A stretch of DNA of 63,723 bases, counting the filler, from Bigelowiella natans CCMP2755 (taxonomy: Eukaryota > Protista > Cercozoa), in NCBI GenBank assembly GCA_000320545.1. It is 9 parts of 9 records of this genome, joined end to end, with 100 filler letters (N's around TTAATTAATTAA, not from the genome) between each part and the next. Parts side by side here need not be neighbours in the genome. Positions count along the whole stretch, not along the records: positions 53,389 to 60,380 come from ADNK01000813.1; 8 more parts are not named here. The stretch is one strand, 5' to 3'. Shown piece after piece: positions 1,850-62,400 of this stretch. The notes below the pieces were generated by a model, which worked only from the letters and a program-made list of their open reading frames with translations, did not search any database and was not told the origin of the DNA. Position numbers and translations under genes: made by a program. The number at the start of each line of letters is the position of its first letter. Position 1 is the stretch's first letter.

Positions 1850-3280
1850 TGCGTCGCTCCTGGCAAATTGAATGTGTGTTTTTTTCAATTGTTATTCTAA
1901 TGCCACGGTCTAGCGGTGTACAATCTAGCAATGCACACATTCTATCATGACATGTTGCATGCATGCAGTGCAAGTGCACACCATGTACCTTATTGTCACG
2001 TGCGTGTGACCGCATCCATGCACGCACGGTTCCTTCCTTGCGCGTGCGATGTGGTGGTCGCTAGCGAGGAAGAGCGGGGTAGATACAGCTAGCCAGTGTT
2101 GTTGAGCGCCTGCGAGCTAGCGAGGGTCATCTGGGCATTGTCAAGCATCTAGTTGACATGAAGGCAAACATCGAGGCCGAAGACACATGCAGTGAAGCAA
2201 TATGGGGGAATTGCACCATCGAGCCACACCTGGACTCCATACTTCGCATTGAAAGTTGTGATGACATGCATTTGGGCCTTGTCCTCCGTCTTGGCCTTGT
2301 CATCCTCACTTCGGACACCCAGGAATGCCCGGACTCGGACACTGATTATGACACAAATGAAGAAGACGAAGACGAAATACTTCGCCACCGGAAATTTAGA
2401 CTGCGCAAGGTCGACATTGAAATGTTTCTCAAGCAAAAGTACATCGAGAGACAGATCCCATGTATTCAGCAGAGATGTGACGAGTCTGTTCATGTTGAGC
2501 AAAGATTTGAAGAGGGCGCTGGGAGCACCGGTTCGCATCTTAGCGGGACACAAGAGGAAACGTTGCTAGCCGCTAGCTGGAACATGGCGTGACAGTTGTG
2601 CGTGGCATTTGCACCGCTAGACTGACGATGAACACGAACTAGCGCACTGCAGCACACTGCTAGACTGTGTGTGTTTTGTGTGTGTGTGTGTGTGTGGCAG
2701 TCTGCAATGATGTTGCGGCGGTGCATCATCATGGCACTGTTTATGCCCAAATGATGAACGGAATGATCGGAAAGCAGAAGATTTCTGCGCTAGCTAGCTA
2801 GCTGCACCTGCCCACCTAGCGCTAGCTAGCCACTCACACGCACCTCACTAGCGACAGCCACATTACAATTCTAGAACTAGACAAGAAAATATCTAATCGG
2901 GGATGCGCGGTCACACACGCACGTCGTGTCTAGCTAGATGTCACACAAGTGTGTGCCAGCATGCCACACGCATGCATGCATGTGCATTGAGCACAGTTCA
3001 TCTAAGCACAGTGGAGCGAGCGAGCGCGCTAGCGCGATAGATTGGCTGCTTAGATCACTGACATCCATTGTATTAGAACAAAATGTCCGCTAGAAATGTC
3101 TAGAATGTTCCCAATTTTGCAATGTCTTGCGCGTGGCGATATTGCGCTACGCACTGACTGACATGCGTGTACGTCTAGATGTGTCTAAAAATCTAGAAAT
3201 GGCTGCTAATGATCGCTGTCCACTGGCATGCACGCACTTTTATGTTGTACACTACACGCGCATGTGTGCGCACACATAGT
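1850..3280. other. Intergenic TpA-poor, CTAG-rich island 1
   Basis: In 2543-2860 I count 12 TA within CTAG and only 1 elsewhere. It has a (GCTA)n run near 2790 and lies between convergent gene ends at 1494 (+) and 3319 (-). Confidence 0.75.
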
Positions 3281-8529: not shown

Positions 8530-10150
8530 CAAGACTGATTGTCCCTAGAATTGCTCAAAAACTCCACATGAAATGACCAACTTGACGACTCGGGGAGTTC
8601 TGATACATGAACATCGTGTGAATATCTTTGCACTACGAAGACAACCATCTCACACCTTAACTTTCGGGTATACAATCTTGAGCCGCAACGCTTTATTGGA
8701 TATATTTCGAAGGGTCTAAAACGTTGAATAATATGTATTGTAGGTAGATAAATGAGGTCATGGCAACAACACATCGCCTCAGCTCTCCTCCAAATTAAAA
8801 GAAACATTCGTACTTCATGGAAGGGAGAAGGTTGCATGAAAATAGGTTGTTGTGTGCGAAGAAATCTATGTGTGGGGCGATTTTGACCAGTTTTTGCACT
8901 ATCCCTTTCTCTTCCGGCACGATGTCTTCAAAGATCACTTCAGCAGGCTCGCATAAGAGCATCCTATTGACGTAGTACACAGAGTCCTCAGAGTTATATC
9001 GAATGACTGCGAAAGCGTATTTCGTAGCCCCAAAATCCAAACTGAAATGAAGAAGCGGACCTGTTCTCTCGAGAACTGAGTGCTGTGCCCATGTATTCTC
9101 CTGTAGACAAGAACGATTCCCCAGCATCCTCATCCTAACGGAAAGATGAGATCATTTTCCACAAGAAAGTTTCATCACCAGCTATGCGTGTTCTGGACTA
9201 TTTTACAGGCTACAGGAATCGGATCCATCGCGCACATATATCTGCAAACCTTTCTTCTCTTAATTGAAATTTTGGAAAATTTACCCCAATTATGTTTGTG
9301 GTGATGATTCAGGGTATACCCTACAGCTAAAATTGTAGCAGCACACCTTCGTCTTGACGGCACTCTTATCCGCCACTGCCTTGTCAGTGGGCATCACTTT
9401 GAGTTTTCGATGCCCTGTAAGCACAAAAATTGTTAGGTGGAGAATGAGCCTCCTCCTCCCCGATGTGCTCCAATAATGACTGACACAGTCCGAATGGAAA
9501 GAAAACACAAACGATCTAGGAGTTTTCCCATACTTACAAGTGACACAAAGCCAGAACTTTGGTGAACACTCATGAAGTCGAAGCCGATGTCCTTCAAAAA
9601 TAATTTATTTTGTTCCCGGATACCTTAGAATGCTTGAGGAAAGCCACTTGCAGGGAGGAGGGAGGTTTGTTCGGTTTTGGAGGGACGCCTTTTCGTTCGT
9701 CAGTTTCGAAAGCAAAGGGTCTGTTTAGTGTTTTCATGCCGTTCTCTGGGTGCGACAACCATTTCATCAACTTAAGCTGTAGGTATTCCCGCTCATGACA
9801 TTGCGCATATTGGTAAAACTGCAAATCGGTAAACTTTTCTTGGCTTTAGCCTAAAATATGGGCTAATTTAGCTGACGTAAACAACAATTTGCCTGAATTC
9901 TAGTGTAATTACTTTTTCTGTTTCTTTGAGGGTACGAATAAATATTCTGTGAAAATAAAATGCGGTCCTGTGCGCGATACCAAGCAGAATTTATTCCAGC
10001 TGTTTTTTAGGGAAACACATGGAAATCTTAAGTCGGATACATGCAGATCTCAAACATTTTTATTTTTGTACGAATTGCGGTGGAAAGAGTGTGACGACTG
10101 GATAGGAATAATATTCCTACGACAAGGAAGTCTACGAGTGATTCTTGCTG
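8530..10150 (-). CDS. Hypothetical spliced gene (exon structure uncertain)
   Basis: Minus-strand intron with gtaagt donor (~9537), ctaac branch point and ttacag acceptor (~9415). Open segments 9824-9620 and 9133-8812 include LLHFSLDFGATKYAFAVIRY. I could not reconcile all exon phases. Confidence 0.4.
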
Positions 10151-11040
10151 GCTAGCAACAGATGCTTTCGCATGATGGTGGGTGCCTCCCCGTCCTGCGC
10201 GTTATTTTTCTGTTTGATTTACGTGCTCATTTTTCATGATTGTTCATGACAACGTTCTGGCTAGCTGGATGCACGTGCCAGCGTGCATGGACCTTGCTAG
10301 CTTGACACGCCGGTCACAATTCCAGAATTGTGAGCTCGAGGTCCAAATCAGTCCACGTCCACCGCCAGCTCTGGAGCTAGACATCCAGCAAAGATTAATC
10401 ATTTCGATGCTCTTGTGGTTCAAAAGTACGCATGCGTTGGAAACACTTCATTCATGCTGATTCCTGCTCGCATCGGTGATCGCTCACAGCTAGCTGGACA
10501 GCTGCAGAGACAGCTAGACAGTCTAGCAGTTCTGCACACACAACACTGACAGAAAATCGTCGCTGACTGCTAGCTGAAGTGCGCATCGCATGCTGGCATG
10601 CTCAGAACAACGCAACCCTGATGCACGAATTTTCCGCATCATGCTAGCATGGCGTGTTGCATGCTGCGGATGGCTAGATGGGTTGTCGTGTGGCTCGCAT
10701 GCAGCAAGCTAGCAAGTAGCAGCAGAGCCGACAGTGGCAGAGCGAGCGATCCATTTGTGCATTGGAGTGACATGGACAATGAACAATTAGCAAAGGGACA
10801 GCCGTGCTCACGTGGTGCTCACGTGGCGGTTGGGTAGAGGGCAGCAACAAGCGCTAGCTGCTGGACGCGCATGATTGAGACACTGATGCTGTGCTCCATT
10901 CTAGCATTGCTAGATTGCGCACTGCCGACTGGATGGACATAAATGATGGTGTCATAGACATGAGTGTGATGACTAGCTAGACATGTTTACTGAAGAGTGC
11001 ATGCGCGTGTGTGTCACGCAATGATGGGTACTGTTGCGTT
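10150..11040. other. Intergenic TpA-poor, CTAG-rich island 2
   Basis: In 10429-10716 all 7 TA dinucleotides are in CTAG. It lies immediately downstream of the KAP3 stop. Confidence 0.8.
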
Positions 11041-11097
11041 CCCTTCCGAATCTAACGTTTCTACGCACCACCTGCATCCAAGTAGTAATTCTGCAAA

Positions 11098-11601
11098 TCA
11101 TCGTCGTCGAGATTCAGCCAAGCTGTCTTCATCATCGTTAGGGTATTCATCTGACATATGACTGGATCCTGGAAGGAGCGAAGAATCGGGTTGCATCTCA
11201 CCGCCGCCACTGGGCACATGGCCGCCAGCATGAAACTTAGGCGAGAAACGACCGCTGCTGTCCAAGCTTTCTCCATAGTCCAGCTGATTGGCAGCGTCCC
11301 CTTGATCTAGCTGCGTACACGGCGTTTCTTTATGTCAATGATTAGATCTCGAATGGTGTTCAAGCAACATACCCAAAGGAACACTATTTTAATCACGTAT
11401 ATGTCCAAACCATCGTTTTTGCATATGTACGTATCTGTGCACATGCATAACGTATAGGCTGAGTAAATGTTGATTACATCCGCACTGTCATCCCATTGCA
11501 TCTGCGAAGGATCGTATCTCAACGCCCCGACTTCGTCTGAGCATAGAACGATAGATTTGATTGATGGGACTCACGAACATGCACGCACCCACTCTCCCTC
11601 T

Positions 11602-11641
<40 letters not shown>

Positions 11642-11662
11642 CACACACATATACACTTATAT

Positions 11663-11703
<41 letters not shown>

Positions 11704-11914
11704 CAAATACTAATCGGAACAGGATATTCTGGACACAATTGATTGTGCAATCAACACATCATTATAAAATATATAATTCTCTTCATTTTCTTCTTTGTGA
11801 CCCTCTTCATAATATTGTTCCTCTCCGTAACTTTCCATCGGGTTCTTGTACTCTCTGCACACACAGTGTATAGCAGAAAAACAAATGAATATTTCGTACC
11901 TTTCCTTTATGAAC

Positions 11915-11949
<35 letters not shown>

Positions 11950-12276
11950 CGATATCTGTCTTACTGTTCAATCAATATATCATTCACGAGGACGCGTGCA
12001 CACACGAAGGCATGCAAGATTACATTTCACAACGATAATACTACCCTTCTGGTGCTTCTGAACTCTCGATGAACTCAATCCATTCGCGATTCATATTCTG
12101 ATGATAGGGGGGAGGATAGCGGTGACAAAACCACAAAAGACAGGGACACGGATGGACGAGTGAGAGACAGGCGTATGAAAATTGAGGAGTTTTTTTCCTC
12201 TTTTCTTTGACACAATGCGATGAAAGCATGCAAGTGTCTATGGCGCGCGCGCACATGCGCGCGCGTATGTGTGTAA

Positions 12277-12323
<47 letters not shown>

Positions 12324-13537
12324 AGAGATTCATGGGTGTTCCACATATTGTCGTGAATGGCTACTTCAAATCTCTTTTCTCGAATGCGCACTTGCCAACC
12401 GTCCACATCCGACTGAACCACCTGTCGAAATTAAGAAGGCGTGAGTTCCTATCATGTTGCAAGTTTTTGAAGATAAACCACGACCTCCATTTTCCATCAT
12501 CGATGATCAAGGAAATTTAACTACTCGAAATTCGATTACTATTTTTCTCATCACCATCAATCATTGTCAAAATCGTCTGCAGCGTCATATTCTGTGAAGG
12601 TAATGATGCATCTATCTCTTTCTCTCTAATGCACTGACCAGATCGAGGAGCTTATTGGTCATGTTCCGAATGGCTTCACTATCGTCGCAAGTAAGGTCCA
12701 GTAATATGTGGATCTGAAAACAGAGGAGAGGCGAGGGATGTTCATGTTGTAAAATGAATGGATACACGCTTAAGTACCGTGTGTGTGTGTGTGTGGTGTG
12801 TTGGAGGAGGGGGGGGGGGCAGCAAAGGAGAGAGAGGGGGAATAGAGAGAGAGAGAAGAAATAATCGAAGTAAGAAGAGAAGGAAAATTAATGAGGAAGA
12901 GGAACTCCGCAGATTTTCCCTCTTCTTCGTCGCAGCGCCAAAATACTCGGTGATTTAGAATAATCAGCCATAGCTCGAAGCCCACACTGCAATTGCCGTG
13001 TATGCGTTCGGGTGTAATAAACGTACCAACTCCTCATGCGCGGCAACAACCTGAATCAAATGAAGATGGTGATGATAGGAACTGGTGAGCGAATGATGAT
13101 CATAATGATGGTGATGATGATGATGATGATGATGGTGATGATGAGTTGAGGTTATCTCGATTCTTATTGCTAGGAGACAAGTCGGAGGCTTTTTGTGAAT
13201 ATTGAAATAAGGTTTTAAGTACGATGACCTCCCTGCCTTCCTCGTGCAAACATATCCGGAACAACGCGAACAGCTGTGGGAATGGATGAGGAAGACACAA
13301 TATTCACTACATCTGACCGATCATGAATGTGGATTGTTCCAATCAATACAAACATGGTACGACATGTATGCATGTACAAATTGTATGTTCGGGTGGTTTT
13401 CACACGGACCGATTGCAGCAGCAAGTCCTCGTCTCGCATTTTATCCTTTACCACCTACACGATGTTGGAGTTTCATCAGATCAATAGAGAAATCTACAAT
13501 CATCTCCCATTTCTCCCCGAAACTGACCCCCCCCCGT

Positions 13538-13582
<45 letters not shown>

Positions 13583-14964
13583 CAAGCATGGTTACTGCCT
13601 GAATCATCATCATCATCACCATCATCATCTCATCATCGTATTGTTGGACTCACCGAGCACAACTTATGCACGAGGTTCGAGTTGGCTAAGAGGGGTCCGC
13701 ACTTCGGGTCCAAAGCGAATGTTCCGATCACAATTATTACTCCCAACACCACGTCGTCCTGAACAAAGAAAAAAGAAGATAGTGATGATAAGGAGGAGAA
13801 GGAGGAGGAGGAGGAGAATATGTTTACGCGCGCACACTCGCGTGTGGTTGTGAAAAGTGCTGAGATATGATTACATATGAAATTGATATTCCAAATTCCT
13901 AGTCGAGATATGTGCTCATTATTTATAACTGACTGTCAATACTATAACTTTACATCGGCGAATCCGGGGTTGAGGTGCTTGGAGAGGGACTCCAGGAAGG
14001 AGTGCTTTATGAGTAATTGATGGTAAAGAACATCGTGCAGTTGGATGTTGCCTGAAGATGGGAAATCATAATTCGAAAGATCCTTAAGCTTATGTTATCA
14101 AACTAGCAAACAAACGATGGAGGACCCGCCACTAAAGACGTATCAATCGGGAATGCTTAGAATATTTACACACGCAAGAGCGCCTCCCTCCCTCTCTCTT
14201 CTCTCTCTCGTCTCTCTCCGTCTTCCTTTACATATATTTATTTATGTGTGTGAGAAGATGCGAAAGGTGATGGACAACCGAGTGTCCTGAGCGTCTCCAC
14301 TAAATAGTCGTGCGACTCCGCTCGAATCGCCATCCCCACCTGGACGTGCATGCATACCAATAATTTCGTAATGTAATGCACGATTTTCCATGAAAAATAA
14401 ACAGAATCCGTTTCTCAAAGGTTGCAGATATCATCGGCATAACTGTGATGTCAATTTATGATTCCAAAATATGAGGTGGCCTCTTGGAAAACGCACTTAC
14501 ATTTTGGTATTTCTTGGAGTGGGGATAAGGAATAGGGGGCGGGGAGGGAAAGGAAGACAAGAGCGAAATAACATGCGATAATTGGACAGGTTCCGGTTTA
14601 GTTGCTGCCGCGTAACTTACGAACCATCTGGTGCATATATGGAGAGAACGCCTTCCATAGACGAGGAAAATTGCTCACATTTCTCACCTAGAAAATGCAC
14701 GTAATGTCAGGATTCCAGATGCTTGGCGATGTAAGAGGAGGGCAAGACAAGGGGAAACATCATAAGTAATAATGTCCCTATACCCGTCCTCTGCTAATAC
14801 ACGCGCTTTATGCTTATGTTTCATCTGTGCTACTTACAAGTTTCATGAGGAGATTATCCCAGTTTTTGTACGCTCTCTGCAGAAGCTTTCCCAACAAATC
14901 TCCTAATATTAGTAGTTTAATTAATGTTACATCTACACATTCACACAAACGCACAGAAACACAC

Positions 14965-15001
<37 letters not shown>

Positions 15002-15880
15002 CGCGCGTCGCTTCATTTTTGCCTTTTTTTACAGGATCTGCGAGAGATTTGAACGGGACCGATTAGCAACGGGCAGATAACCACGACTACGACAACGAAG
15101 ACGATGATACGTAGTATACCTTTGGCTATGAGAGTGGCGCATCGCTCAAAGGAGGCCAGATTCACTCCGAGTGAGATTAGATGGTCGTCCACAAGGTTGT
15201 TCTTGCATCTTTTTTTAAAAAGAGTAGAAGACATTAATATCAAGACTGAAAGCTATCATCATGCATACGTGTAAAAATGTGAAAGGAAGGAAAACATGCA
15301 TGTTGTTCGTCCACTCTCACCCGCCCCACCTCTCGCTTTATCATAAATATTTAAATCTACCAGGTACCTCTTAGTCTCCCCACCCCCCTTCTTTTCCCTC
15401 TCTGTCTACAAGCTATTGCAATGGTTGAGTCTTACTGTATTAAAAGAGCACAGAGGATTTGTGTGCCCATCTCGAGAGACTTCCCAAGTTCTTCGGGAAG
15501 GGCTAAAGAGCAAACGGAATGACAATCACGTGCACGTACAATTAGGTATATTGTATTTAAATATTGTATTTGTGTGTGTGCGTTTGACAGATTCGTAAGT
15601 GCGCTGAATAGATAATGGAACGGTTGCTCTGGAATGAGAATATTACGTTGATTAGGATCCAATCCAGTGGTGATTTGGTAGAGAAGCTGTAGAGAGAGAT
15701 GAACAGAATAGTAAGATAAAAAGACTGCCTCCCCCTCCTTTCCACATACAAAATCCCTCATACATGCCACGCCTTTCCTGCACCTTGATCGCCACATGTC
15801 GGGTGACGGGCTCCTCGATTCCTTTGACAATTTGACGATGAAACCCGCTGTTGATAGGAAACTTCGCGCAAACATACCAT

Positions 15881-15917
<37 letters not shown>

Positions 15918-18900
15918 GACAGACAGACAGGGGAGAAGGGGGGGGGGGGGGGGGGGGGGAGAGAGAGAACGCGGAAATGTGCACAAGTTAGTGCCAGATA
16001 AAGGCAATATCGTTCCCTTTTCTTTCATCGGCGCAATGTACTGGCATAATGATGATGATGATAATAATGATGATACAGACCTGTCTCTGCTTCTCGTCGA
16101 ACGTAAGATTAGACATCACCTGCAATACCTGAATAGACAAATACGACGATAAGAGCATTTTGCTAAGACTCGGAACATAGGATGGCAGTAAGAAGAAAAA
16201 GTAGGGAAAATGGCATAATGAGAACAAGATGATAATGGTAAGATATGTGCGTAATGAAGGCTTCGCCTGTTCGACACCTCATCCTTCAAATCTGGATGGT
16301 TGGAGGCATTATAAAGGCCCTGAAGTTTTTCCATAGCGCCCAATCGAGCTAGCTCCTGCACGTTTTCCTCGAATATCGAAATGGACCTCAAGAATATCAC
16401 CGCCAGCTGTAACAAGTCGTCTGGCGGGAGAAAGTAAGTAAGCAATAGCAAGCATTCATCGTAAAAAGTTGTCAAGAAACTCAGGGATTTGCCAAGCAGA
16501 AACACACAATCTTCAGAAGCCGCAGCAGCGGTAGCAGCACCTGTCATTTTCGTGTCGGTCACAGAGCCCAGCATCTGCTCATTTAAAAAAATATGTTGTT
16601 TTTTCAAAAATATATATTTTGTATAATTCCAAAAAGGAGACCCAAGCAGGTGTGAAGAGGGTCGAAGACATGACAATGGCAATTTCGGTGGACCTTTCTG
16701 GTTTCCTGCCTGCGCAATTCATCGACCAAGAATTTTACGATGTTCCTACGAACCATCTTGACCTGCATTGTTGGATAATTATGATGATGATAATGATGAT
16801 GATGATGATGATATAGGGGTTATGAGGGTCATTCAAGTAGCTAAGGTGTGGACATCACATCGATGATGTTCCACCAGCGAAGGGAGGACAGACAACATGT
16901 TACTAGACTACAACTATCGCCCGGAGGCTCAGCCTTTCTATCTCCCATATATCATGGAAGATTTACTCGTGTTTGTCCCTGTTACCTGCACGTTGCTGTC
17001 TTCTGCGACATTGAGTAGAATGTAGTACGCGATGTATAATAAATGCTCCTGGGGTTACGACAGCAAAGATGCAGCAGCAGCAAGATAAGGGATCGGAACA
17101 AGGAGGAATGGTAGCTAAATAGCCTCCAACGAATACATCAGATCACTATCATCATACACCGCAAGTCTTATTCTTCCTAACTCCTTCAACCTCTCTGTCA
17201 GCTTTACTACTGTATAATAAATTGGTGGAAAAGGCTAATTTTGTGTGGGACAGAATTGGAAACGTTACCTGTTTTTTCAGCCACCGTGCAGCCTTTTCCT
17301 TGCCCTCCTCTCCTAGGAAGTATGGAGACAGTTTTGAGGGACGGGAAGGATCGTAGAGTTGATCTATCATGTTTATTCGGTGAACGCACCTAGTGTCCCA
17401 GCCTTCAGCTCCTGCTTCCAGATATTAATTTTGTGGTTGTATCTTTTCCCTGCGAAACACATACAAAGAATATTCGGGTATATGAAGAAGGCGCAGCATG
17501 AAACGCCTATACTCAGCCCGACTAAAATCCCAAAACAATCATATTCGGAAAACGCTCAACTTTAAATACTTCAAACTACAAGTGCTTTTGGTTACTTTCG
17601 AGCTCCAGGAGCTTCATCGTCGTGTCTCCAACCTTCCAAAAGGCACGAATCATTTATGAGATCACATATGCATCCATCAGCTGCGTGGGAGGAGACATAG
17701 AAGAAAGGCCCACCTTATTTCTCAGTAGCATGTCATGTAGTTGCGAGAATGACGAAAAGCAGAAGAAGATCTGCAACAAACAAGCTAAGCGTTAGACAAC
17801 AAAGAGCTTTCCAGCCGTTTCCCCCTCCCCTTTGAGAATCGTTCGCAATGCCAGTTATATATGTTGTCGTCATGATCGGATGCAACAACTCAGTGGAGTA
17901 TTTGAGGTGAGAATATTCTACTCACATTCAGAATGTTTATGAACAGATCCGAGCTGCCGCGCTTCAAGTCATCTTGGAGCACTCGCCCGAGAATCTACTC
18001 AGGGAATACAGAACACATAAACATAAAACTGCTTCAGCAAAAAAATGTAGTTAAAGAAGGAATTCTTGGATAGTTCAGGAAAACCATGATTTTGTTTGAA
18101 CGGTTGTGCCGTGTAAAAAGATCAAGGGATGCTTCGGGGGAAACGTTTGATATCTCGATAACAATTTCCCATTATGCTATTTGTAGTTCGTTGCGAAACC
18201 TGGCAAATGGACTCTTCTTTGACGAACGTCTCTAAGTTGTCGTGGAATTGTACTAGCTGTAAAATGAATCCAGTTCCTACAGAGAGGTGGTCAAATTATC
18301 AAAATAACTTTCTCGTGAGTAACTTTCTCTTGAAGCAGTGACAATTTTCTCTTCTCCGAAGAAAATATACATCCCACCTTTGATCTTTGACTTAATGTCC
18401 TCCTCGTATAAAAGCTCCACATACCTTAATCAACGGGTCAACGGCGGGATCAATAAGCATAGAAGAAAGAGAGAGACAGAGAGATAGAAGGAGAGGGGAC
18501 GGGGTGTAAGATGACTTCTCAAGATGGCTGAGCTTGGCCTTGGGAAGTTTCTTTTTTTTACTCGACTTTCGAACACTTCTTTGCTTGCTGCTGGTTGTAG
18601 ACGAGGATCTCGCCGTGTCACTGCCATTCTTTCGCGGAGTAGCCGCCGACTGATCACTTCGATTCGTCATGTCCCCCGCCCATTGAACCTTCTTTTCCGG
18701 TGCGGTATCTAGGCTTGGGCCATGCGATGATGATGATGATGATGACTGCGGTTGTTTGAGTTCCGCATTACCGCCTTCGATTGGCCTGCCATCTGATGTT
18801 CGGCCGGTCATAGACACGTCTTTATTCTGCTCTTGCTTCTGTTGTTCTTCAGGCTTTGGCTGCTGCTGCTGCTGCTTAGGCTGCTGCGAGACATGACGTA

Positions 18901-45599: not shown

Positions 45600-45823
45600 C
45601 TGTTGCTGATCGAGGAGGGTTGTCATCGTCCGCCGCAGTCCGCGCCTAGACATGTGCGTATCAACTTCAGCATGAGTAATATGAGAGCTGTAGGACCAGA
45701 TATCATCCGACCGATGCTGCATGGAGCGGAATCACACATGCATAAGATAATATACTACTCAAAACTAGAGAAAGCATGCAAATATACACATGTATATACA
45801 AGCAACACACGGCTCTGTTTGTG

Positions 45824-45866
<43 letters not shown>

Positions 45867-46800
45867 CGAATACATATCTTACGATGTTATACTAATTGCT
45901 AGGTCGTCTTGCATAAATATCAATACGTTTTTCTTTAACAAAAGCCAATCGCCTAGTACACATAGCATTTAGTTGCTCCAAAACAGAATTGGCCCACATC
46001 TAGACATGGAGGTGTTGTACGTCCATATGTTACATGATGATGCTATGTACACACAATGATGCAAGTACAGTGTGTAGCAGTACGTAGTGGTAGAAATTAA
46101 AGCGCTAGTTATAGCATTCGAGTTTAAGGTATAACATAAGCTATCTAACTAGATTTAGTTATATATGAGACAGATTAGTAGTGTTATGACCACATGCATG
46201 TAGTATGACTAAATGACGGTGGAGCATGCGCAACCAGACATATCACACATCGCACAAACATCATGCATCGGCCCACGCACGCTTGCTTAGACGTTGGTGG
46301 GTGGCGCGGTGCGCGCGGTCAGTTGCGTGACGGTGTCGCCTGACGATGCGTGATGGAAATCGTATGGCACATCACGTGAAAACTGGCAGACTGGTTTGAC
46401 ACAATCGATTGATGCACTTGCACACCGCGATCGAACGACGTACTCCGCTAATGACGATGTAGCCACTCGCTTGTGCTGCATGCTAGCATGCCCAGCTGCT
46501 GCATCAAGCTAGCTAGCTAGCTAGTTGCTAGTCAGCATAGCTCGGATAGCAAGCTGGCGTACACGCACTTCAAGCAAGCTAGTCAAAGATGCCGACACAG
46601 GCTTCGCTCAACAACGGTCGGCAGTTGCACGAACTTATTGGTACTAGCACAGTGTCAGCTCGAAAACAAGTGTCCTCGGGCACAATACCATGATCCAAGT
46701 GAGCAAAGCTGCTTGCGTTTGAATGAATTACCACTCAACAGGTGCGGTTGAAAGGATCCTCAGTCACGCTGACATGCAGCATGTACAGGAATGAAATCGC
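45600..46800. other. Intergenic CTAG/CATG/TGCA-rich island 3
   Basis: (GCTA)4 at ~46508-46523 and a TA-poor core at ~46250-46560. Lies between convergent stops at 45557 (+) and 47370 (-). Confidence 0.6.
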
Positions 46801-53187: not shown

Positions 53188-53480
53188 CAAGTGTTGTAAT
53201 GGGGAGGAGGAGGGGTACAGGAGCAGAAGGAGGCCAACAACGACGAGGATGACGGTGAGGGAATAAAGCCAGAGAGAGAGAGAGAGAGNNNNNNNNNNNN
53301 NNNNNNNNNNNNNNNNNNNNNNNNNNNNNNNNTTAATTAATTAANNNNNNNNNNNNNNNNNNNNNNNNNNNNNNNNNNNNNNNNNNNNTCATGTATTTTC
53401 GTTTTTCTGTCAGCGCCCTCCGCGTGTGCCTCTGTATATCTCGAGCCACCTTCCCCCCCCCCCCCCCTTTGCCCCCCCAG

Positions 53481-53700: not shown

Positions 53701-53745
<45 letters not shown>

Positions 53746-54420
53746 ACTGTAATGGGTGTGTATAATTATTTGTGTTTGTGTACGTAAAATGAAAAGCTAC
53801 GCCAACACGCTTGCAGCCGCGAAGAGTACTATCGCGTTGATACAGGGTACTGTAGATAGCTTAGTAAGAGCCCTTAATAGCGTGGTCGAGGCATTACGCG
53901 CTGTTGTTCATCGTATTTCGGACTTTGCAAGACCGGGCGTCGAGTTTGTGATGGCTAAGACTCAACCGATCCGTAAGGAGGTTACCCTTGCTATCGATGG
54001 GATCACTCAGGTTGGCTTTCTTTAATTCGCCTACCGCCATGAAACTGCTCTTCGGAGCAGTAGTAGGTTTTTGCCATGTTGCTATTGTTGTATGGTTGAT
54101 TGTGTGCATATATGTGTGGTTGTCTCGCTACGCATCGCACACACTTCAAGTACCTACGCAAACAGGAGGTCATAAGGACATCAACTGCGGAACTGCACAA
54201 CGTAGAGGGCACGCTACTAAATGTTGCAAGTCAAGCTCGCGAAAAGATTGCGGACGCCGTGTTAGGTGTCGAAGGGTCTGAACTCGTAGTCGAAGGGCGC
54301 CAGGAGGCTTTGCACGTTGCTGAAGGTGTTCTTGAGGGCGCATCTTCCGCTCTAGGAAGTGCTAAAGAAGAGGTCGATGCTGTTGTAGCCAACATGAAAG
54401 ACATGGAAATGGTCAATTGA
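53481..54420 (+). CDS. 3' exons of a host gene encoding an amphipathic/coiled-coil protein
   Basis: Exons 53481-53524, ~53797-54010 and 54166-54420 splice in frame: FKTVSPAPATSMERS|YANTLAAAK...IDGITQ|EVIRTSTAELHNVEG...MEMVN*. Confidence 0.6.
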
Positions 54421-54429
54421 TTGCTTTGC

Positions 54430-55400
54430 ACAAAACAAAACCAGTGGAGCTAACACGTTTGAATGCACGACGAGGCGTGCTAGAAAGTCGATCATGCTCA
54501 GCTCCAGAGCTGCGCAAGCGCTGGTCCACGCACCACTTCGCTAGCACCAAACGCGTCTGATGACAACATGCGTTGACACAGCTGCACGTTGGACGTTCTA
54601 GCGTTGTGTGCATGGCATTTCACGTGGCATGCATCAATCATGTGTGCAACCAGCTGTGGACCACACGTTCACATTGAACACCCATCATTGTGGTCAAGTT
54701 CATCGCACGGCCAGTTGGGCTAGCTAGCTAGCAGGGTGCACATTGTGGTGCACAATGAGCAGAGCTGGCCATTTGTTGACCCTTCAACACACGCGTGGTG
54801 CGCAATGTGCACACAATGCCAAGTTGAAACGACAAACGAAGTTCACGTTTTTGTTGGAGCAATCGCTAGGTTGGTTCATTGACCTGTTCGTTCACTTTGT
54901 CTCGTCGTCCAGTCAAAGTGCACGGAAACAAAGCACACTTTGCGGGAGACATGAAAATCTCCGAGTGTGAAAGCGTGAGTGAAAGTCGTCAACACACCGT
55001 CCTGGCATCGATGCGTGCGTGTTGTGGACACAGCGTGACCGCTGCACGCAGCTGCACCGCAGGTGACCATTGTGAAAACTCTTGATCGCTTCATCACATC
55101 CGTCTCACCGTCGGTGTTCCTCCAACAGCAACGTGAATTGCCATTGCAACAACACGCATGCACTGCAACGTGTCTGTGTGCAAGGGTCAACGTGAACAAC
55201 ACTGGAACGCGCTGATCGATCACAGGTGCAGAGCGTCGTTCACCTTTCAACGGCGGTGACGCTGTTCGGCAAGAAACGCACAACTTGTTCGTGCGCACGT
55301 CATTGGCTGGTTCACGTCCTCGATCAGCAATGCAACTGGCACCCAGGTTCACCATGTAGCGCGTACCACTACGCGGGCACAAGTCACGTGCGACAACAAA
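54430..55400. other. Intergenic TpA-free island 4
   Basis: 54453-55356 has only 7 TA, all in CTAG. 54869-55356 has none. Confidence 0.9.
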
Positions 55401-55405
55401 GGGGT

Positions 55406-55680
55406 TGTCGCGGATATAGAATATAGATAACGTAGATATTAATACAGCATAGGCACGTGGGTTCCGGCGGGACTCATGGCAGCACACCGGAAGTGTGCTG
55501 CCCCACGTGCGGCGGCATTCGCGAAAGCTTCGCGAATGATTACGCAGTGCACGATTTAATAAAAATATAATCTTTAATAAAAATAAACACAACTCTTCAA
55601 AAGGAAGCAAACGTGCCTTTCCCCCCCCCTGCCTACTTGTGCACGTAGCGCCTCGGCCTGTGAACACCTTACGCGCAACA
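55406..55680 (+). repeat. Putative 5' LTR (275 bp)
   Basis: Ends are TGTCGCG...CGCAACA (6/7 inverted). It has an AT-rich TATA-like start, duplicated TTTAATAAAAATA polyA signals (55555-55587), and a TGG-starting PBS-like site 5 nt downstream. No second copy is available to confirm. Confidence 0.65.
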
Positions 55681-55685
55681 ACCTT

Positions 55686-55703
55686 TGGCTTCCACACACG
55701 GGA
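55686..55703 (+). promoter_or_regulatory. Primer-binding-site-like sequence TGGCTTCCACACACGGGA
   Basis: The reverse complement ends in CCA and resembles tRNA-Glu/Asp 3' ends. It lies between the LTR and the gag ATG. Confidence 0.45.
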
Positions 55704-55719
55704 AACGATTTGACTAACA

Positions 55720-58700
55720 ATGTCACAGCAGCTAGAAGAACAGCAGGACTTTGGCTCGCAGGCCGTGCAAGGGCACGAGCAGAAACAGGAAAGGAAGGGC
55801 GATACGGACGCTAAGGAAGGAGGAGGAACACCTCCACAGGCACCGCCGGGACCAGCACCCGGGATTAAGAAAGCAGATGCAGCAGCAGAGGCACTGGAGA
55901 ACTTCTACGAGGCGGACGACGAGGACGTGGCCGCCGAAAGCAAGAAGGTCGTAATGGCATTACGAGCCTTGCGACCCAGGGCGAGCAACTACGCCAAACT
56001 GAAAGTATCGATAGAATACAAGTATCAGACACATGATGTTTGGGCAGCTATCATGCAGGACATCATGGATTACGAAGCAGACTTACCTCCAGAGTGGGCA
56101 GCTTTGTTTAGGAACGACGGGGGTCTGGGCGCCTCGCGGGGGACGACCCAGAGCACCGTCAAGCAGCAGCAGCCGGTACAGCGGAACACCCAGTTCATGT
56201 CTGTTAAAACAGCACCGGTTATGATAACGAAATACAACGGGAAAAGAGGTGAGGCAAGGAGGTGGTGGAAGAACGCTAGGAGTATACTCTGCGACTTTAC
56301 CCCTAACCCCACCGAAAACGACAAGCTCAAATGGCTAGCTATAATAAAGCAAGCCATGGACCTTTACGAGACAGGCAGGACCCGGATCAGGCAGCTAGAG
56401 AAAATACACACTACAGTTAGTGGGCTACGAGACGTTGAGGCGATAATGAAGGCTTTTGTAAATGAACAGGATGCTAACTCCCTACCCCAGGCTATTAGAA
56501 AATACAGAGCAATGATGCAGCATGAGAGAGAACCTGTTAGAGACTTTGCCACGCGCTTCCAGGATATGATCGACGAACTACATGATTTTAATTACAACAC
56601 AGGTGATGATCAGGCAAGGTTTGAAGAGTTCAAGTTAAAGATAAAGGAATCCACTTACGTTACGGAGAAAGGCTACACCACGATGGAGGCAGCAGTGCAG
56701 GCTATATCCCTACGCGAGCAGGAGCAGGACCGCAAGTTTACCAGCCCTAAGGTACCTGGCATAGGAAACATTAACGCTATTAAGCCGCAGCGAGACTGGT
56801 ACAAGGACAGGGAAGGTAACCGACGTTGCGGATACTGCTCACGTAAAGGGAAACACACCGCTAAAGACTGCAGAGACAGGAAAGAAGGACGACCCAGGAT
56901 GACGATCAGGCAGCTCAACGAACACTACGAGAAGTTAAAGAGAAAGAAAGGCAGAGGACAAGGATATAACAACAGCAAATGGCAAGGCAGCAACAACGGG
57001 AAGAACAATAAATATAAGAACAAAAAGCAGAACAGTATCAATGCTATACAGCAGCAGATAAACGGAATATTAGATCACCTTAAGCAGGCGCCGACGAAGA
57101 CAGCAGTACCAGCAACGCAGGACCAAGACAAGCCCATGACCCTAGACGACATAAAGAACTTAGGAGTATGCAACATTAATGACGAAGACGCTAACAGGAC
57201 TATCAAAGTTGCTATGACCAAGGTTAAAGTTAAAGACAGCTACGGAGACTACAAGAAACTACCTGCCCTTTGGGATAGTGGCAGCATGCCGAAGTCCTTC
57301 ATAAGCCTAAGCACAGTAAGAAGGTTAGGACTATTGGATCAAGTGACTAAGAAAGAACGTAAATATGCTCAAGCAGACGGAAGCTCTTCCATGAAGACCG
57401 TCGGTGAGCTAATGCTAAAGCTACAGATACCTGGCAGCGACGCGGAGACCCAAATCAAGACCCGAGTAGCCATGACTTTATCCATGGAACTACTCCTCGG
57501 ACAGGATGCCCTAGAAAAATTAGGGGGGATCATATCATTCTACAATCACAAGATATACTTTGCTAAGTTGCCAAAGAAGTCAGGCAGGACCATCAGCCAG
57601 AACATGATACGGCTTGACGAGTGGACCTCTGAGTCAAGCGTTAATGCGTTAGAGTTTATGGACCTAGCGGACAACAAGCTACCTACACCTACCGAGCTAC
57701 GGAAGAAGAACCCCGGCAAGACCATCCGACAGATAACGGAGCTACTGGACAAGACCCCCCCAGCTGATGATTGGGATATCGACAAAGGCAAAAAGTACAT
57801 TAATAAAATATTAAACGAGAAGTACTCTGACATCACCAAGCCGACGACGAAGCCCTCCAGCAAGCTTACCCCAGTAAAGATCGAGCTAAAGAAGGGATAC
57901 GAAGAGTGCATCATCAATGACCCAGAACATAGGCGACCGGAAGCGGACTGGGAAAAGATAGAGTGGCAGATCAATGAATGGGCAAAGGAAGGGAAGATAG
58001 AGCCAAGCAACTCACCATGGAACGTGAGACATGTGCTAGCTAAGAAACCTACTTACCCTTTCTTCCGCCTGGCGCACAACTTCATCCGCCACAACCGAGT
58101 AATAAAGAGGATCCAGACACCTACACCAAGGATAGATGACGTTATTGAACACGTCATAGGATACAAATACTACTCTTCCCTAGATAAAAATGAATCATAC
58201 ATGCAGACACCCATCCACAAAACCTCCCGCCCCATTACCGCGTTCTCCAGCAGGCACAGGAAGTGGCACTTCGTCGTATTCCCTTACGGCCTAAGCATAT
58301 CAGGGGATGCGTTCAGTAGTCAGAACTACAGGGCATACACACATGATGGGATGGCGTCTGTGTTGTGGGTGTTTGTGTTTGTGTATGTGGATGATGACAT
58401 AATATGTACCAACACAGTCGTCGCTCAGATCTTCCTCCTGGAAAATATATTTATTAGGTTTGCACACTTCGGTTTTACTATTAGACTGCAGAAGTGTACA
58501 TTCCTAGCTACAAGAATCAAGTGGTGTGGATATTACCTGGAGCAAGGCCGCATCACCCCAAACCCCGAGAAAGTAGCAGCACTACAGCAAGCCCCTAAAC
58601 CTAAGAATGCAAAGGAGTTAAAGTCATTCTTGCAGACTGCAGCTTGGATACTACGTAGGTTCTCCCCTACCTACGCTAGGACTGCAGCTGCTTTTACTAC

Positions 58701-60042
58701 TGCTTACCGGAAGGAGAACTCTGTAGGCCTCAGCTTCGCTAAGGTGTGGGCCAAGGCTGGCCTTGATGCCCACTTCGATAACCTAATAAAGTTATGCAGC
58801 AACACCCTATTGAATGCTAAGCTAGACACTACTAGACCAGCTACCCTATGGACAGACTGGTCTAAGCTAGGTATGGCTGCTGTACTTACCCAAGACCAGC
58901 AGATCATACGGGTGTGGGGCAGGGCCTGCACAGCAGCTGAGGCCAAGTACAGCCCTACAAAAGGAGAGTATAAAGCCATGACTGAGGCGCAGAGGAAACT
59001 AAGATACTACCTGCTGTCGGTGCCCAGCTTCACCTTAATGACTGACCACAAGCCCCTCCTAGGCATCGACCGCAAGCTCGAAGCGCCTAACGATGAGTAT
59101 GCAGCTATGAGGGCGGACACGGAAGAGTTTAGGGACAAGAGGACAGTGGTCTACGCACCAGGAGACAAGCAGCTTGCTGACTATTTCAGCAGGCTGTTCG
59201 AAAAGAAAGTCCCTACCCAGGTCACCCCTATGGTTAACGCGATTACCTTCGAGGACGGCGACTTCCTGCCTGAGCCAGAGGAGCTCCAGCACCTTCAAGA
59301 ACACCTGGATAAATACAAACACAAGCATGAGGTACTTAGTGATAGGATATATGTATACACTAATAATGTTAGGCGTACCTACGTGCCACGGCGGACCAGG
59401 GGAGCCCTTCTCTTTACCGCCCATGGACCTGCACACGTAGGAGAAAACCATATCACTGCTCTACTCTACCATTACTACTGGCCCTACAAGCTAAAAGAGA
59501 TAAGGACATACCTGCGTGGCTGCAGGTGCTCCAGCTTGAAGGCGGCAGGCGTCGCCACCAAGGAGTCCAGCAAGAGCCGTGCATCTAAGAAAATCAAAGC
59601 AAGGAACTTCTTAGATATCGTGCAAATTGATGTTTATAAGTACGATGGCTATCACTACCTTACCTTCGTTGATGTGGCCACTGGAAAGTGCTGGGTTAAA
59701 AAGATTATCAAGGTCAACGTTGCTAAGAAGAACAAAGGCTTATATAAGCAGAGGCTTACTAACTGCTACCGTACCTGGGAGTCTGAGCTCCAGGCTATCC
59801 CTGATGAAGTTAGCATAAACAAGATACCAAAGAAGTTACATGTGGATAATGAGACCTCTCTTCTACAGCTACCACACCCTAATATTGATGCCTCACCTGT
59901 ATACTATGCCCAGTCCAACTCCAAGGTAGAGCGACTCCACCGCACCTTGGCCAACCTAAGCAGGATAAATAGCACCACACCAGACAAGATACAAAGGGTT
60001 AGTAAACGACACCTTCACGTCTGGGGGAGGTATCAAGGATAA
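55720..60042 (+). CDS. Gag-Pol polyprotein (1440 aa; integrase C-terminus continues in another frame)
   Basis: Zn knuckle CGYCSRKGKHTAKDC, protease ALWDSGS, RT (IEPSNSPW, SSLD, PYGL, YVDD), RNase H (WTDWS, KYSPTKGE, TDHKPL, LADYFSR) and integrase (H-H-C-C, IDVY, VDN, QSNSKVERLHRTL). Confidence 0.96.
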   Translation: MSQQLEEQQDFGSQAVQGHEQKQERKGDTDAKEGGGTPPQAPPGPAPGIKKADAAAEALENFYEADDEDVAAESKKVVMALRALRPRASNYAKLKVSIEYKYQTHDVWAAIMQDIMDYEADLPPEWAALFRNDGGLGASRGTTQSTVKQQQPVQRNTQFMSVKTAPVMITKYNGKRGEARRWWKNARSILCDFTPNPTENDKLKWLAIIKQAMDLYETGRTRIRQLEKIHTTVSGLRDVEAIMKAFVNEQDANSLPQAIRKYRAMMQHEREPVRDFATRFQDMIDELHDFNYNTGDDQARFEEFKLKIKESTYVTEKGYTTMEAAVQAISLREQEQDRKFTSPKVPGIGNINAIKPQRDWYKDREGNRRCGYCSRKGKHTAKDCRDRKEGRPRMTIRQLNEHYEKLKRKKGRGQGYNNSKWQGSNNGKNNKYKNKKQNSINAIQQQINGILDHLKQAPTKTAVPATQDQDKPMTLDDIKNLGVCNINDEDANRTIKVAMTKVKVKDSYGDYKKLPALWDSGSMPKSFISLSTVRRLGLLDQVTKKERKYAQADGSSSMKTVGELMLKLQIPGSDAETQIKTRVAMTLSMELLLGQDALEKLGGIISFYNHKIYFAKLPKKSGRTISQNMIRLDEWTSESSVNALEFMDLADNKLPTPTELRKKNPGKTIRQITELLDKTPPADDWDIDKGKKYINKILNEKYSDITKPTTKPSSKLTPVKIELKKGYEECIINDPEHRRPEADWEKIEWQINEWAKEGKIEPSNSPWNVRHVLAKKPTYPFFRLAHNFIRHNRVIKRIQTPTPRIDDVIEHVIGYKYYSSLDKNESYMQTPIHKTSRPITAFSSRHRKWHFVVFPYGLSISGDAFSSQNYRAYTHDGMASVLWVFVFVYVDDDIICTNTVVAQIFLLENIFIRFAHFGFTIRLQKCTFLATRIKWCGYYLEQGRITPNPEKVAALQQAPKPKNAKELKSFLQTAAWILRRFSPTYARTAAAFTTAYRKENSVGLSFAKVWAKAGLDAHFDNLIKLCSNTLLNAKLDTTRPATLWTDWSKLGMAAVLTQDQQIIRVWGRACTAAEAKYSPTKGEYKAMTEAQRKLRYYLLSVPSFTLMTDHKPLLGIDRKLEAPNDEYAAMRADTEEFRDKRTVVYAPGDKQLADYFSRLFEKKVPTQVTPMVNAITFEDGDFLPEPEELQHLQEHLDKYKHKHEVLSDRIYVYTNNVRRTYVPRRTRGALLFTAHGPAHVGENHITALLYHYYWPYKLKEIRTYLRGCRCSSLKAAGVATKESSKSRASKKIKARNFLDIVQIDVYKYDGYHYLTFVDVATGKCWVKKIIKVNVAKKNKGLYKQRLTNCYRTWESELQAIPDEVSINKIPKKLHVDNETSLLQLPHPNIDASPVYYAQSNSKVERLHRTLANLSRINSTTPDKIQRVSKRHLHVWGRYQG

Positions 60043-61829: not shown

Positions 61830-62400
61830 ATGATGCCTAGCTAGCTAGCTAGCTAGGCACATTGTGCCAGTGGCTAGTGTGGGATGGAGCTTGCTAGCTA
61901 GCTACCAGCTATTGACGGCTTACGCCCTATTATTCACGCAGGATTNNNNNNNNNNNNNNNNNNNNNNNNNNNNNNNNNNNNNNNNNNNNTTAATTAATTA
62001 ANNNNNNNNNNNNNNNNNNNNNNNNNNNNNNNNNNNNNNNNNNNNTGCACGCCCACGTACCGCCTCTAGCTAGGCTTGAGCTAGCACTAGAGCACTCCAC
62101 TAGTCTGGAAACTTGATCATGCTAGCTAGCTAGCATGCATCTCTAGATCTAGACGTACGCACGCGCCACGCGTGCAGATGCACAGAAGCATGCAAACAAC
62201 GCCATGTGTCTAGATGTGTGCAACGCATGTTAGCATGTAACAAGCAACAATGCTCGACCGCAATTTCTTGACCTAGCGCGCTCTGGAGCCTGGAGCTGCA
62301 CGTCTGACTAGCTGAGCCCCTCCAGCTAGCTAGCTAGCTAGCCCTGCCGCTGCCAGTCCCAGCAGTGCCAGCACCACTAGACTAGAGCACGCTCGCATGG
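61830..62400. other. Intergenic CTAG-rich island 5 (spans the gap)
   Basis: (CTAG)n runs at ~61837, 61893, 62121 and 62326, on both sides of the 61946-62045 spacer. Confidence 0.75.

What the first reader, a model, noticed from the sequence alone, without database searches (positions are those of the whole stretch)
54430..55400. TpA-erased islands that spare CTAG: possible undescribed DNA-modification or 'reverse-RIP' mutational system at gene 3' ends
Seen (manual count): about 900 bp (54453-55356) contain just 7 TA dinucleotides, all inside CTAG, and about 490 bp (54869-55356) contain none. Dozens would be expected at this base composition. CpG is plentiful, CA/TG words (TGCA, CATG, CACA, GTGT) are enriched, and I saw no CCGG. 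The same signature recurs at ~1850-3280, 10150-11040, 45600-46800 and 61830-62400, always intergenic and adjoining a gene 3' end. Established: CpG deamination and fungal RIP deplete CG/CA and create TG/TA, so they cannot explain TA loss. In Leishmania, modified thymine (5hmU/base J, made by JBP enzymes) marks convergent Pol II termination regions. Inference: a localised process converts TA to CA/TG (T>C via a modified T, or A>G via adenine modification or deamination). CTAG would be protected, or generated from CCGG/CCAG, marking termination or heterochromatin zones.
Basis: partly seen in the sequence, partly recalled or inferred. Interest (0 to 1): 0.88.

Follow-up and report, generated by a model that had tools for sequence, protein, structure and literature searches.

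The report
TpA-erased island in Bigelowiella natans
A silent 0.9-kb stretch of the alga Bigelowiella natans has lost almost every TA dinucleotide to CA/TG, which matches a TpA-specific hypermutation process that a 2026 preprint already demonstrated in this species, so the core finding is real but no longer new.

Summary
Positions 54453-55356 (904 bp) carry 7 TA against about 50 expected. All 7 lie in CTAG, and the last 488 bp have none. CA and TG are 1.7-1.9x enriched and CpG is normal. Chance is excluded (z = -7.9).

The organism is Bigelowiella natans. The island begins at the poly(A) site of a spliced, expressed gene. It is RNA-silent. It ends to the base at the 5' LTR of a highly expressed Ty3/gypsy element with normal TA content.

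A 2026 bioRxiv preprint (10.64898/2026.01.13.699255) shows by mutation accumulation that B. natans hypermutates TpA to CpA/TpG about 1000-fold in integrated viral DNA. [quoted passage not shown] This island meets its thresholds. Converting the TAs of the neighbouring DNA in silico reproduces most of its composition.

The base-J and termination-zone link is unsupported.

Two details are absent from the preprint's main text and held supplements:
- CTAG is spared completely.
- ACG/CGT is about 2.5-fold in excess, which fits a minor ATG>ACG class in the preprint's mutation table.

The island's origin is unresolved.

The parts
53789..54010 (+). Exon 1 of a small expressed gene of unknown function (74 codons from the ATG)
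   Evidence: The frame is open (no Pfam match). Metatranscriptome contigs join 54010 to 54166 (tables 5 and 8).
54011..54165 (+). GT..AG intron of 155 nt
   Evidence: table 5: 'skips 155, GT..AG (cut +3)', seen in contigs of two metatranscriptomes (X15, X16).
54166..54420 (+). Exon 2 plus the TGA stop. Transcripts end at about 54450-54480, which is the left edge of the island.
   Evidence: tables 2 and 8: contigs end at 54450 and 54460. X22 depth falls from 17.6 to 0.38 after 54480. TA occurs in varied contexts, with 9 TA from 54166 to 54452 (read).
54453..55354 (.). TpA-erased island. Rho_TA is 0.14 and Rho_CA+TG is 1.78. It is RNA-silent, has no tandem repeats or long repeats, and has no recognisable coding content.
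   Evidence: composition; depth about 0 across 54481-55332; no Pfam match or homologues; no repeats, and no similarity to the neighbouring DNA.
54480..54483 (.). Surviving CTAG
54541..54544 (.). Surviving CTAG
54598..54601 (.). Surviving CTAG
54720..54731 (.). (CTAG)3 run holding three of the seven surviving TA
54866..54869 (.). Last surviving CTAG. No TA follows until the LTR.
55355..55653 (+). Putative 5' LTR (about 299 bp, starting TG) of a Ty3/gypsy element, with a poly(A) site at 55602. TA content is normal from its third base.
   Evidence: 4,321 reads carry a purine-rich (..GGGGGAGG) loose end just before 55355, as expected of 3'-LTR copies preceded by a polypurine tract. 13,527 reads carry a poly(A) loose end behind 55602. 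A joint links 55653 to 55355. Depth is 9,000-17,000. The exact 3' end of the LTR is inferred.
55720..60042 (+). gag-pol ORF of 1440 aa (protease, RT, RNase H, integrase zinc-binding domain). TA o/e is 1.14.
   Evidence: Pfam; 86-100% identity to JGI Bigna1 models. It probably belongs to the 5.7-kb LTR element with about 150 copies mentioned in the preprint's Fig. S5.

Best explanation
The island is a stretch of silent B. natans nuclear DNA on which the species' TpA-targeted hypermutation has run to completion. Every TpA was turned into CpA (T>C) or TpG (A>G on the same base pair, read from the other strand). This raised G+C by roughly 8-9 points and left an excess of CA/TG, TGCA and GTGCAC. 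Only TA inside the palindrome CTAG survived, because there both strands present the least-favoured context (TAG).

A slower secondary step, ATG>ACG (CAT>CGT on the other strand), probably produced the ACG/CGT and ACGT excess.

The enzyme is unknown. The preprint proposes an ADAT2-like adenine deaminase, and a thymine-modifying route gives the same signature.

The left edge coincides with the end of an expressed gene. The right edge is the insertion point of a younger or exempt, actively transcribed LTR retrotransposon.

Shown: the composition, the boundaries, the silence, and (by the preprint) the existence and spectrum of the process in this species. Inferred: that this particular island was made by that process, that CTAG is refractory, the secondary step, and a foreign origin for the DNA.
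For: The species is B. natans.

The preprint reports de novo A>G and T>C at TpA at about 6e-7 per site per generation in integrated NCLDV and virophage DNA. It also reports 124 clusters of 1-kb windows with Rho_TA <= 0.43 and Rho_CA+TG >= 1.52. The island scores 0.14 and 1.78.

I converted all non-CTAG TA of the left flank to CA or TG in silico. The result had GC 0.54, rho CA 1.74, rho TG 1.78, TGCA 18.7 and GTGCAC 2.0 per 904 bp. The island has 0.53, 1.86, 1.69, 17 and 4.

CA and TG alternate without strand runs (z = 1.15), just as both strands are hit in the mutation-accumulation lines.

The island is RNA-silent, like the hypermutable NCLDV region.

My hand tally of the preprint's Table S2 gives TAA-type 71, TAT-type 76, TAC-type 56 and TAG-type 23. 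TAG/CTA is therefore the least-hit context, which fits CTAG being the last to go.

The same table lists three T>C changes in ATG context. The island holds 56 ACG/CGT against 19-24 in the flanks or simulations, while the other NCG classes sit at background.
Against: No foreign origin could be shown for the island. There was no Pfam match, no protein homologue and no match in viral or metagenome contigs.

At 904 bp the island falls below the preprint's cluster size of three or more 1-kb windows.

The context bias in the mutation-accumulation data is only about 2-3 fold, and the target counts are not known to me. By my rough reckoning that is too weak to explain complete survival of 5-7 CTAG alongside total loss of about 45-85 other TA. 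Something more must protect CTAG.

Simple conversion does not explain the CC/GG depletion (0.46 and 0.59).

No mutation has been observed at this locus itself.
Confidence: 0.85

Rival explanations
1. The outcome is the same but the chemistry differs. A TET/JBP-like enzyme oxidises thymine in TpA (5hmU, 5fU or a base-J-like product), and this mispairs with G to give T>C.
For: TpA is self-complementary, so T>C and A>G cannot be told apart in either the island or the mutation-accumulation table. The preprint's deaminase candidate rests only on homology and a structural model.
Against: No paper in the library links B. natans with 5-hydroxymethyluracil. No modification data exist for this locus. 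No TET/JBP gene was examined here.
Confidence: 0.2
2. The island is a functional element, such as a termination or insulator zone, a nucleosome-organising tract or an array of protein-binding sites. On this view selection, not mutation, keeps it TA-free and retains the CTAG sites.
For: The island starts within about 30 bp of the upstream gene's poly(A) site. CTAG is twofold over expectation and includes a (CTAG)3 run.
Against: A measured mutational process in this species predicts the composition without any selection. The right edge is set by a transposon insertion, not by a gene feature. There are no tandem repeats or long repeats and no periodic motif. No structured RNA family matches.
Confidence: 0.06
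3. The island is foreign DNA that already lacked TA in its donor, so the composition is inherited rather than acquired.
For: Its G+C (0.53) is above the nuclear mean of 0.449 given in the preprint's Table 1. It matches nothing else in the piece.
Against: As far as I know, no genome lacks TA altogether over about 500 bp while keeping AA, TT and AT near expectation. CTAG is usually the rarest tetranucleotide in bacteria (established knowledge), which is the opposite of what is seen here. The higher G+C is what TA>CA/TG conversion would produce.
Confidence: 0.03
4. ADAR-like hyper-editing of a double-stranded RNA, followed by reverse transcription and insertion.
For: The A>G direction fits. The preprint notes that ADAR favours U upstream of the edited A.
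Against: From established knowledge, ADAR also edits AA and CA contexts and favours a 3' G, so UAG should be lost first. Here AA (o/e 1.08) and CA (1.85) are not depleted, and TAG inside CTAG is what survives. CA and TG show no strand-coordinated runs. The preprint's mutations arise in place in single-copy genomic DNA.
Confidence: 0.02

Closest known systems
TpA-specific hypermutation of integrated viral DNA in Bigelowiella natans (Mettrop et al., bioRxiv 10.64898/2026.01.13.699255, 2026)
   Same: It is the same species. The dinucleotide signature is the same: TpA lost and CpA+TpG gained. Both of the preprint's thresholds are met. The DNA is silent.
   Different: The island is under 1 kb, so it would not count as one of the preprint's clusters of 3 kb or more. 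No viral or TE ancestry is detectable. Erasure is complete (Rho 0.14, and 0 over 488 bp), whereas the NCLDV region stands at 0.45. CTAG sparing and the ACG/CGT excess are not mentioned in the preprint's main text (for CTAG).
Fungal repeat-induced point mutation (RIP)
   Same: Both are localised, context-specific transition hypermutation of selected genomic DNA that leaves a dinucleotide scar. The preprint's authors draw the same comparison.
   Different: The direction is opposite. RIP turns CpA into TpA, whereas here TpA becomes CpA/TpG and G+C rises. RIP is triggered by duplication, yet here an LTR element that is probably the one the preprint counts at about 150 copies sits next to the island with its TA intact.
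Deaminase-based restriction (APOBEC3 C>U, ADAR A>I, ADAT2/3 acting on DNA)
   Same: The proposed logic is the same: an editing enzyme mutates invading nucleic acid.
   Different: No enzyme has been shown. The context rule (TpA, with CTAG spared) fits neither the APOBEC nor the ADAR preferences. The action is on resident chromosomal DNA over many generations.
Base J / 5hmU marking of termination regions in kinetoplastids
   Same: The only shared points are a possible thymine-directed chemistry and a position after a gene's 3' end.
   Different: From established knowledge, base J is an epigenetic mark that leaves T in the sequence and causes no TA loss. No evidence of such a base exists for B. 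natans.

Membership tests
B. natans TpA-hypermutated region (preprint's definition) | The sequence belongs to the B. natans nuclear genome | tested here: met
   the adjacent gag-pol ORF is 86-100% identical to JGI Bigna1 gene models. DNA runs of one organism label, each about 100-190 million letters, hold all the sampled words.
B. natans TpA-hypermutated region (preprint's definition) | Rho_TpA <= 0.43 together with Rho_CpA+TpG >= 1.52 in a window of about 1 kb | tested here: met
   Rho_TA is 0.14. (CA+TG) observed over expected is 200/112.6 = 1.78.
B. natans TpA-hypermutated region (preprint's definition) | A cluster of at least three consecutive such 1-kb windows | tested here: not met
   The island is 902-904 bp. 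It is bounded by an expressed gene and cut off by an LTR insertion. Whether it resumes beyond the retroelement cannot be seen, because the piece ends at 60380.
B. natans TpA-hypermutated region (preprint's definition) | De novo or polymorphic A>G and T>C changes at TpA observed at the locus | not testable with these tools
   No TA targets remain apart from CTAG. The one environmental contig over 54507-54654 differs by a G>C change and a 3-nt insertion, which is uninformative.
B. natans TpA-hypermutated region (preprint's definition) | Viral, transposon or other foreign ancestry of the target DNA (proposed by the preprint, not strictly defining) | tested here: inconclusive
   There was no Pfam match at E <= 0.01, no homologue, no similarity to the neighbouring retroelement under T>C/A>G-tolerant scoring, and no hits in viral or metagenome contigs. 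Heavy mutation may have erased any signal.
Fungal RIP | C>T at CpA, giving TpA excess and CpA/TpG deficit in repeated DNA | tested here: not met
   One search shows the opposite: TA o/e 0.14 and CA/TG o/e 1.7-1.9. The island has no second copy within the piece.
CpG-methylation decay | CpG deficit with matching TpG/CpA excess | tested here: not met
   CpG o/e is 1.02. ACG/CGT is in excess rather than deficit.
ADAR-type hyper-editing | A lost in UA, AA and CA contexts, a 3' G favoured, and strand-coordinated clusters | tested here: not met
   AA o/e is 1.08 and CA is 1.85. TAG within CTAG survives. The runs test gives z = 1.15.
Base J / 5hmU domain | Presence of a modified thymine in the DNA | not testable with these tools
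   This needs LC-MS or long-read kinetics. No literature link was found.

The most novel reading that the evidence does not exclude
CTAG is not merely the slowest context but is truly immune. Either the editing enzyme reads a four-base context on duplex DNA, or B. natans (or a resident virus) marks CTAG with a methyl group that blocks editing. On this reading, saturated islands like this one also record a second activity, ATG>ACG, that makes new CpG. Endpoint islands would then give the full specificity of an unidentified eukaryotic DNA editor and a sequence handle for finding it.
Probability: 0.3. Interest if true: 0.6.

Novelty: already known. Interest (0 to 1): 0.4.

Why it matters
It is an A:T>G:C 'reverse-RIP' confined to TpA, and it was shown experimentally in this alga only in 2026. 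That supports the scan's approach, but the system is no longer undescribed.

What this locus adds is a fully saturated example with base-exact borders:
- The process stops at an expressed host gene on one side.
- A probably high-copy, highly transcribed retrotransposon next door keeps its TA, so repetition alone is not the trigger.
- CTAG survives completely.
- ACG/CGT accumulates.

The last two are testable specificity rules that could help identify the enzyme, whether it is an adenine deaminase or a thymine modifier.

Tried and rejected
- The look-up of encoding contigs found neither the gag-pol ORF nor its Bigna1 paralogue P0001. No further B. natans genomic DNA could therefore be fetched, and CTAG sparing could not be tested on other islands.
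- The metagenome search with exon 2 of the upstream gene found no relative (one search failed because the machine was busy).
- A degenerate island pattern (CA as YA, TG as TR) found nothing in metagenome or viral contigs. The substitutions could therefore not be polarised against a relative.
- The ten longest island ORFs gave no Pfam match beyond noise. The 159-aa ORF had no homologue.
- I tested whether the island is a decayed copy of the adjacent retroelement or of the left flank, using local alignment that tolerates T>C and A>G. Scores were no better than shuffles, so I rejected this.
- There is no tandem array or long repeat. Rfam gave only low-complexity miRNA noise outside the island. 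The bacterial promoter and terminator scan was empty and is irrelevant for a eukaryote.
- I considered a simple rule that 'A followed by G is never edited'. It is rejected as absolute, because the preprint's table lists 4 TAG and 19 CTA events.
- The spliced protein of the upstream gene was not searched as a joined sequence. Its exons were scanned separately.

Full report
**1. The observation**

I read the piece and counted dinucleotides.
- Positions 54453-55356 (904 bp, G+C 0.53) hold 7 TA against 49.7 expected from base composition.
- The TA start at 54481, 54542, 54599, 54721, 54725, 54729 and 54867, and every one lies in CTAG.
- From 54869 to 55356 (488 bp) there is no TA.
- CA is 1.85x and TG 1.69x expectation, AC 1.33x and GT 1.43x.
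- CpG is at expectation (1.02), while CC (0.46) and GG (0.59) are low.
- The DNA on either side has TA at 1.11-1.14x.

Chance is excluded. Base shuffles never gave fewer than 29 TA (z = -7.9). At the flank frequency, seven or fewer TA has P = 2e-19. In the flanks only 4% of TA lie in CTAG, so seven of seven has p about 1e-10. Counting the (CTAG)3 run once gives 1e-7. Fourteen DNA runs dated 2011-2025 hold every sampled word of the stretch, so it is not an assembly artefact, although some may be the source sample.

**2. Anatomy**

*Left of the island.* A small gene lies on the + strand, with exon 1 at 53789-54010, a GT..AG intron at 54011-54165, and exon 2 at 54166-54420. Two marine metatranscriptome contigs confirm the splice. 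Transcripts end at about 54450-54480. The last ordinary TA (54451) lies just there. The gene has no Pfam match. Its TA content is ordinary for coding DNA. A (TA)n microsatellite at 53703-53740, about 700 bp to the left, is untouched.

*The island.* It has essentially no RNA coverage in the species' own RNA reads, with depth 0 in most bins from 54481 to 55332.

*Right of the island.* At 55355 RNA depth jumps to 9,000-17,000.
- Thousands of reads carry a purine-rich loose end (..GGGGGAGG) immediately before 55355.
- 13,527 reads carry poly(A) after 55602.
- A joint links 55653 back to 55355.

I read this as the 5' LTR (about 299 bp, starting TG) of an LTR retrotransposon. The reads over it mostly come from the 3' LTRs of many copies, each preceded by its polypurine tract. 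That tract is not in the piece, which fits a 3' LTR lying beyond 60380.

The ORF at 55720-60042 encodes a 1440-aa gag-pol with protease, RT, RNase H and an integrase zinc-binding domain. The island therefore lies outside the element, and its right border is the insertion point, exact to the base. The element's TA is normal (o/e 1.14) from its third base onward.

**3. The organism and the literature**

The gag-pol ORF is 86-100% identical to JGI 'Bigna1' gene models, so the organism is Bigelowiella natans, a chlorarachniophyte. [quoted passage not shown] I read its results, discussion, methods and the held supplements.

The preprint followed 15 mutation-accumulation lines of B. natans.
- 231 of the 302 nuclear point mutations fell in one integrated giant-virus region and one virophage region. 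The rate there was about 6e-7 per site per generation, roughly 1000-fold above the rest of the genome.
- 230 of the 231 were A>G or T>C, and nearly all fell on TpA (TA>TG or TA>CA).
- The authors then scanned the genome in 1-kb windows. They found 124 clusters of three or more windows with Rho_TA <= 0.43 and Rho_CA+TG >= 1.52, enriched for transposon and viral domains and for unannotated genes.
- They propose a defence by DNA editing, perhaps through an ADAT2-like adenine deaminase, and compare it with RIP.

The island here has Rho_TA 0.14 and Rho_CA+TG 1.78. It is a small, saturated example of the same scar.

**4. Does the process explain the composition?**

I converted every non-CTAG TA of the neighbouring DNA at random to CA or TG. 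Starting from the left flank, the result compares with the island as follows:

| Measure | Converted left flank | Island |
|---|---|---|
| G+C | 0.54 | 0.53 |
| rho CA | 1.74 | 1.86 |
| rho TG | 1.78 | 1.69 |
| TGCA per 904 bp | 18.7 | 17 |
| GTGCAC per 904 bp | 2.0 | 4 |

The main features need nothing beyond TA>CA/TG acting on ordinary local DNA. CA and TG are interleaved along the island with no strand runs (z = 1.15), just as both strands are hit in the experimental lines.

**5. What simple conversion does not explain**

*(a) CTAG.* The island has seven, against 0.9-2.9 in the simulations. I tallied the three-base contexts in the preprint's Table S2 by hand, pooling both hypermutable regions and collapsing strands:

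| Context | Events |
|---|---|
| TAA-type | 71 |
| TAT-type | 76 |
| TAC-type | 56 |
| TAG-type | 23 (TAG 4, CTA 19) |

TAG/CTA is the least-hit context, and CTAG is the only tetranucleotide that shows it on both strands. CTAG should therefore be the last TA to go. That is qualitative agreement.

The bias is only about 2-3 fold, and the target counts are unknown to me. My rough reckoning is as follows. If all of roughly 45-85 other TA are gone, CTAG at a two- to three-fold lower rate should also be largely gone. The 5-7 survivors therefore point to much stronger protection of the full palindrome. This is inference. The preprint's main text does not mention CTAG.

*(b) ACG/CGT.* The island holds 56 per 904 bp against 19-24 in the flanks and simulations, while CCG, GCG and TCG classes sit at background. 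ACGT is 11 against about 1.5-3. CpG with a 5' A or a 3' T makes up 69% of island CpG against 50% in the flanks (Fisher p = 0.006). The preprint's table lists three T>C changes in ATG context (ATG>ACG). Over a long time such a minor activity would turn ATA first into ATG and then into ACG, and ATAT into ACGT. I offer this as the likely source of the excess. It would also explain why CpG is not diluted.

*(c) CC/GG.* The depletion remains only partly explained. Local host DNA is already CC/GG-poor.

**6. Origin of the island**

I could not show that the DNA is foreign.
- Its ten longest ORFs give no Pfam match.
- The 159-aa ORF has no homologue.
- It shows no similarity to the adjacent retroelement or to the left flank, even under scoring that forgives T>C and A>G.
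- It has no tandem or long repeats.
- Searches of metagenome and viral contigs found nothing.

The preprint also notes that most genes in its clusters are unannotated. A foreign origin is plausible but not shown.

**7. What the locus says about targeting**

The borders are sharp. On the left the erasure stops where an expressed gene's transcript ends. On the right it stops at the first base of an LTR element that is highly transcribed. That element probably belongs to the 5.7-kb family with about 150 copies mentioned in the preprint's Fig. S5. The element keeps all its TA. Repetition alone is therefore not the trigger, unlike RIP. Either the insertion came after the erasure, or targeting follows the identity or chromatin state of a segment rather than spreading from a neighbour. 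Silence goes with erasure here, as in the NCLDV region, though the preprint's virophage region is expressed.

**8.

- The 'reverse-RIP' idea, TA converted to CA/TG by T>C or A>G, is correct and now has experimental backing.
- 'Undescribed' is out of date.
- The link to termination zones and base J has no support. Base J does not remove T from the sequence. No paper links 5hmU to B. natans. In this piece the position after a gene's 3' end is matched on the other side by a transposon insertion.
- Sequence alone cannot tell whether the chemistry acts on T or on A.
Creation from CCGG or CCAG is unnecessary.

**9. Verdict**

The feature is real and correctly read in its essentials, but it belongs to a process already described for this species, so I rate its novelty as 'already known'. 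Its value lies in two unreported specificity details, CTAG immunity and the ACG/CGT build-up, and in a clean example of base-exact borders. All of these can be tested at once on the public genome and on the preprint's mutation list.

Noticed in passing
window 55355-55800: The LTR region is covered at depth 9,000-17,000 in B. natans RNA reads, with a poly(A) site at 55602. From about 55546 to 55800 thousands of reads lie in the opposite orientation. This suggests an antisense transcript that ends in the same AT-rich patch (55556-55600). However, the reads pool four runs of possibly different strandedness.
   Followed up: partly
window 53703-53740: A perfect (TA)n microsatellite of about 19 units lies just upstream of the expressed gene, only about 700 bp from the TA-free island. 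The hypermutation evidently does not reach this host DNA.
   Followed up: no
preprint Table S2, not in the window: By my hand tally of the de novo mutations, A>G in TAG context (4) is much rarer than its strand-mirror, T>C in CTA context (19). The binomial p is 0.003. The other three contexts are strand-symmetric. This may reflect gene orientation in the viral regions or a real strand effect.
   Followed up: partly
preprint Table S2, indel list, not in the window: Many of the de novo insertions in the mutation-accumulation lines end in ..ACA (for example TGACA, CCAACA, TACA, TACACA and GCATTACA). This looks non-random and is not discussed in the parts of the preprint I read.
   Followed up: no
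window 53452-53469 and 55621-55628: Poly-C tracts of 18 and 8 bases lie in the DNA upstream of the gene and in the U5-like part of the LTR.
   Followed up: no
window 58354-58392: A GT-rich, microsatellite-like stretch lies inside the reverse-transcriptase coding region just before the YVDD motif. It encodes 'VLWVFVFVYVDD' and gives a weak false mir-297 match.
   Followed up: no
window 54507-54654: A seawater metatranscriptome contig (run X18) covers the left part of the island with one G>C change and a 3-nt CAG insertion. A near-identical island therefore exists in wild populations. Whether the contig comes from RNA or from contaminating DNA is unknown.
   Followed up: no
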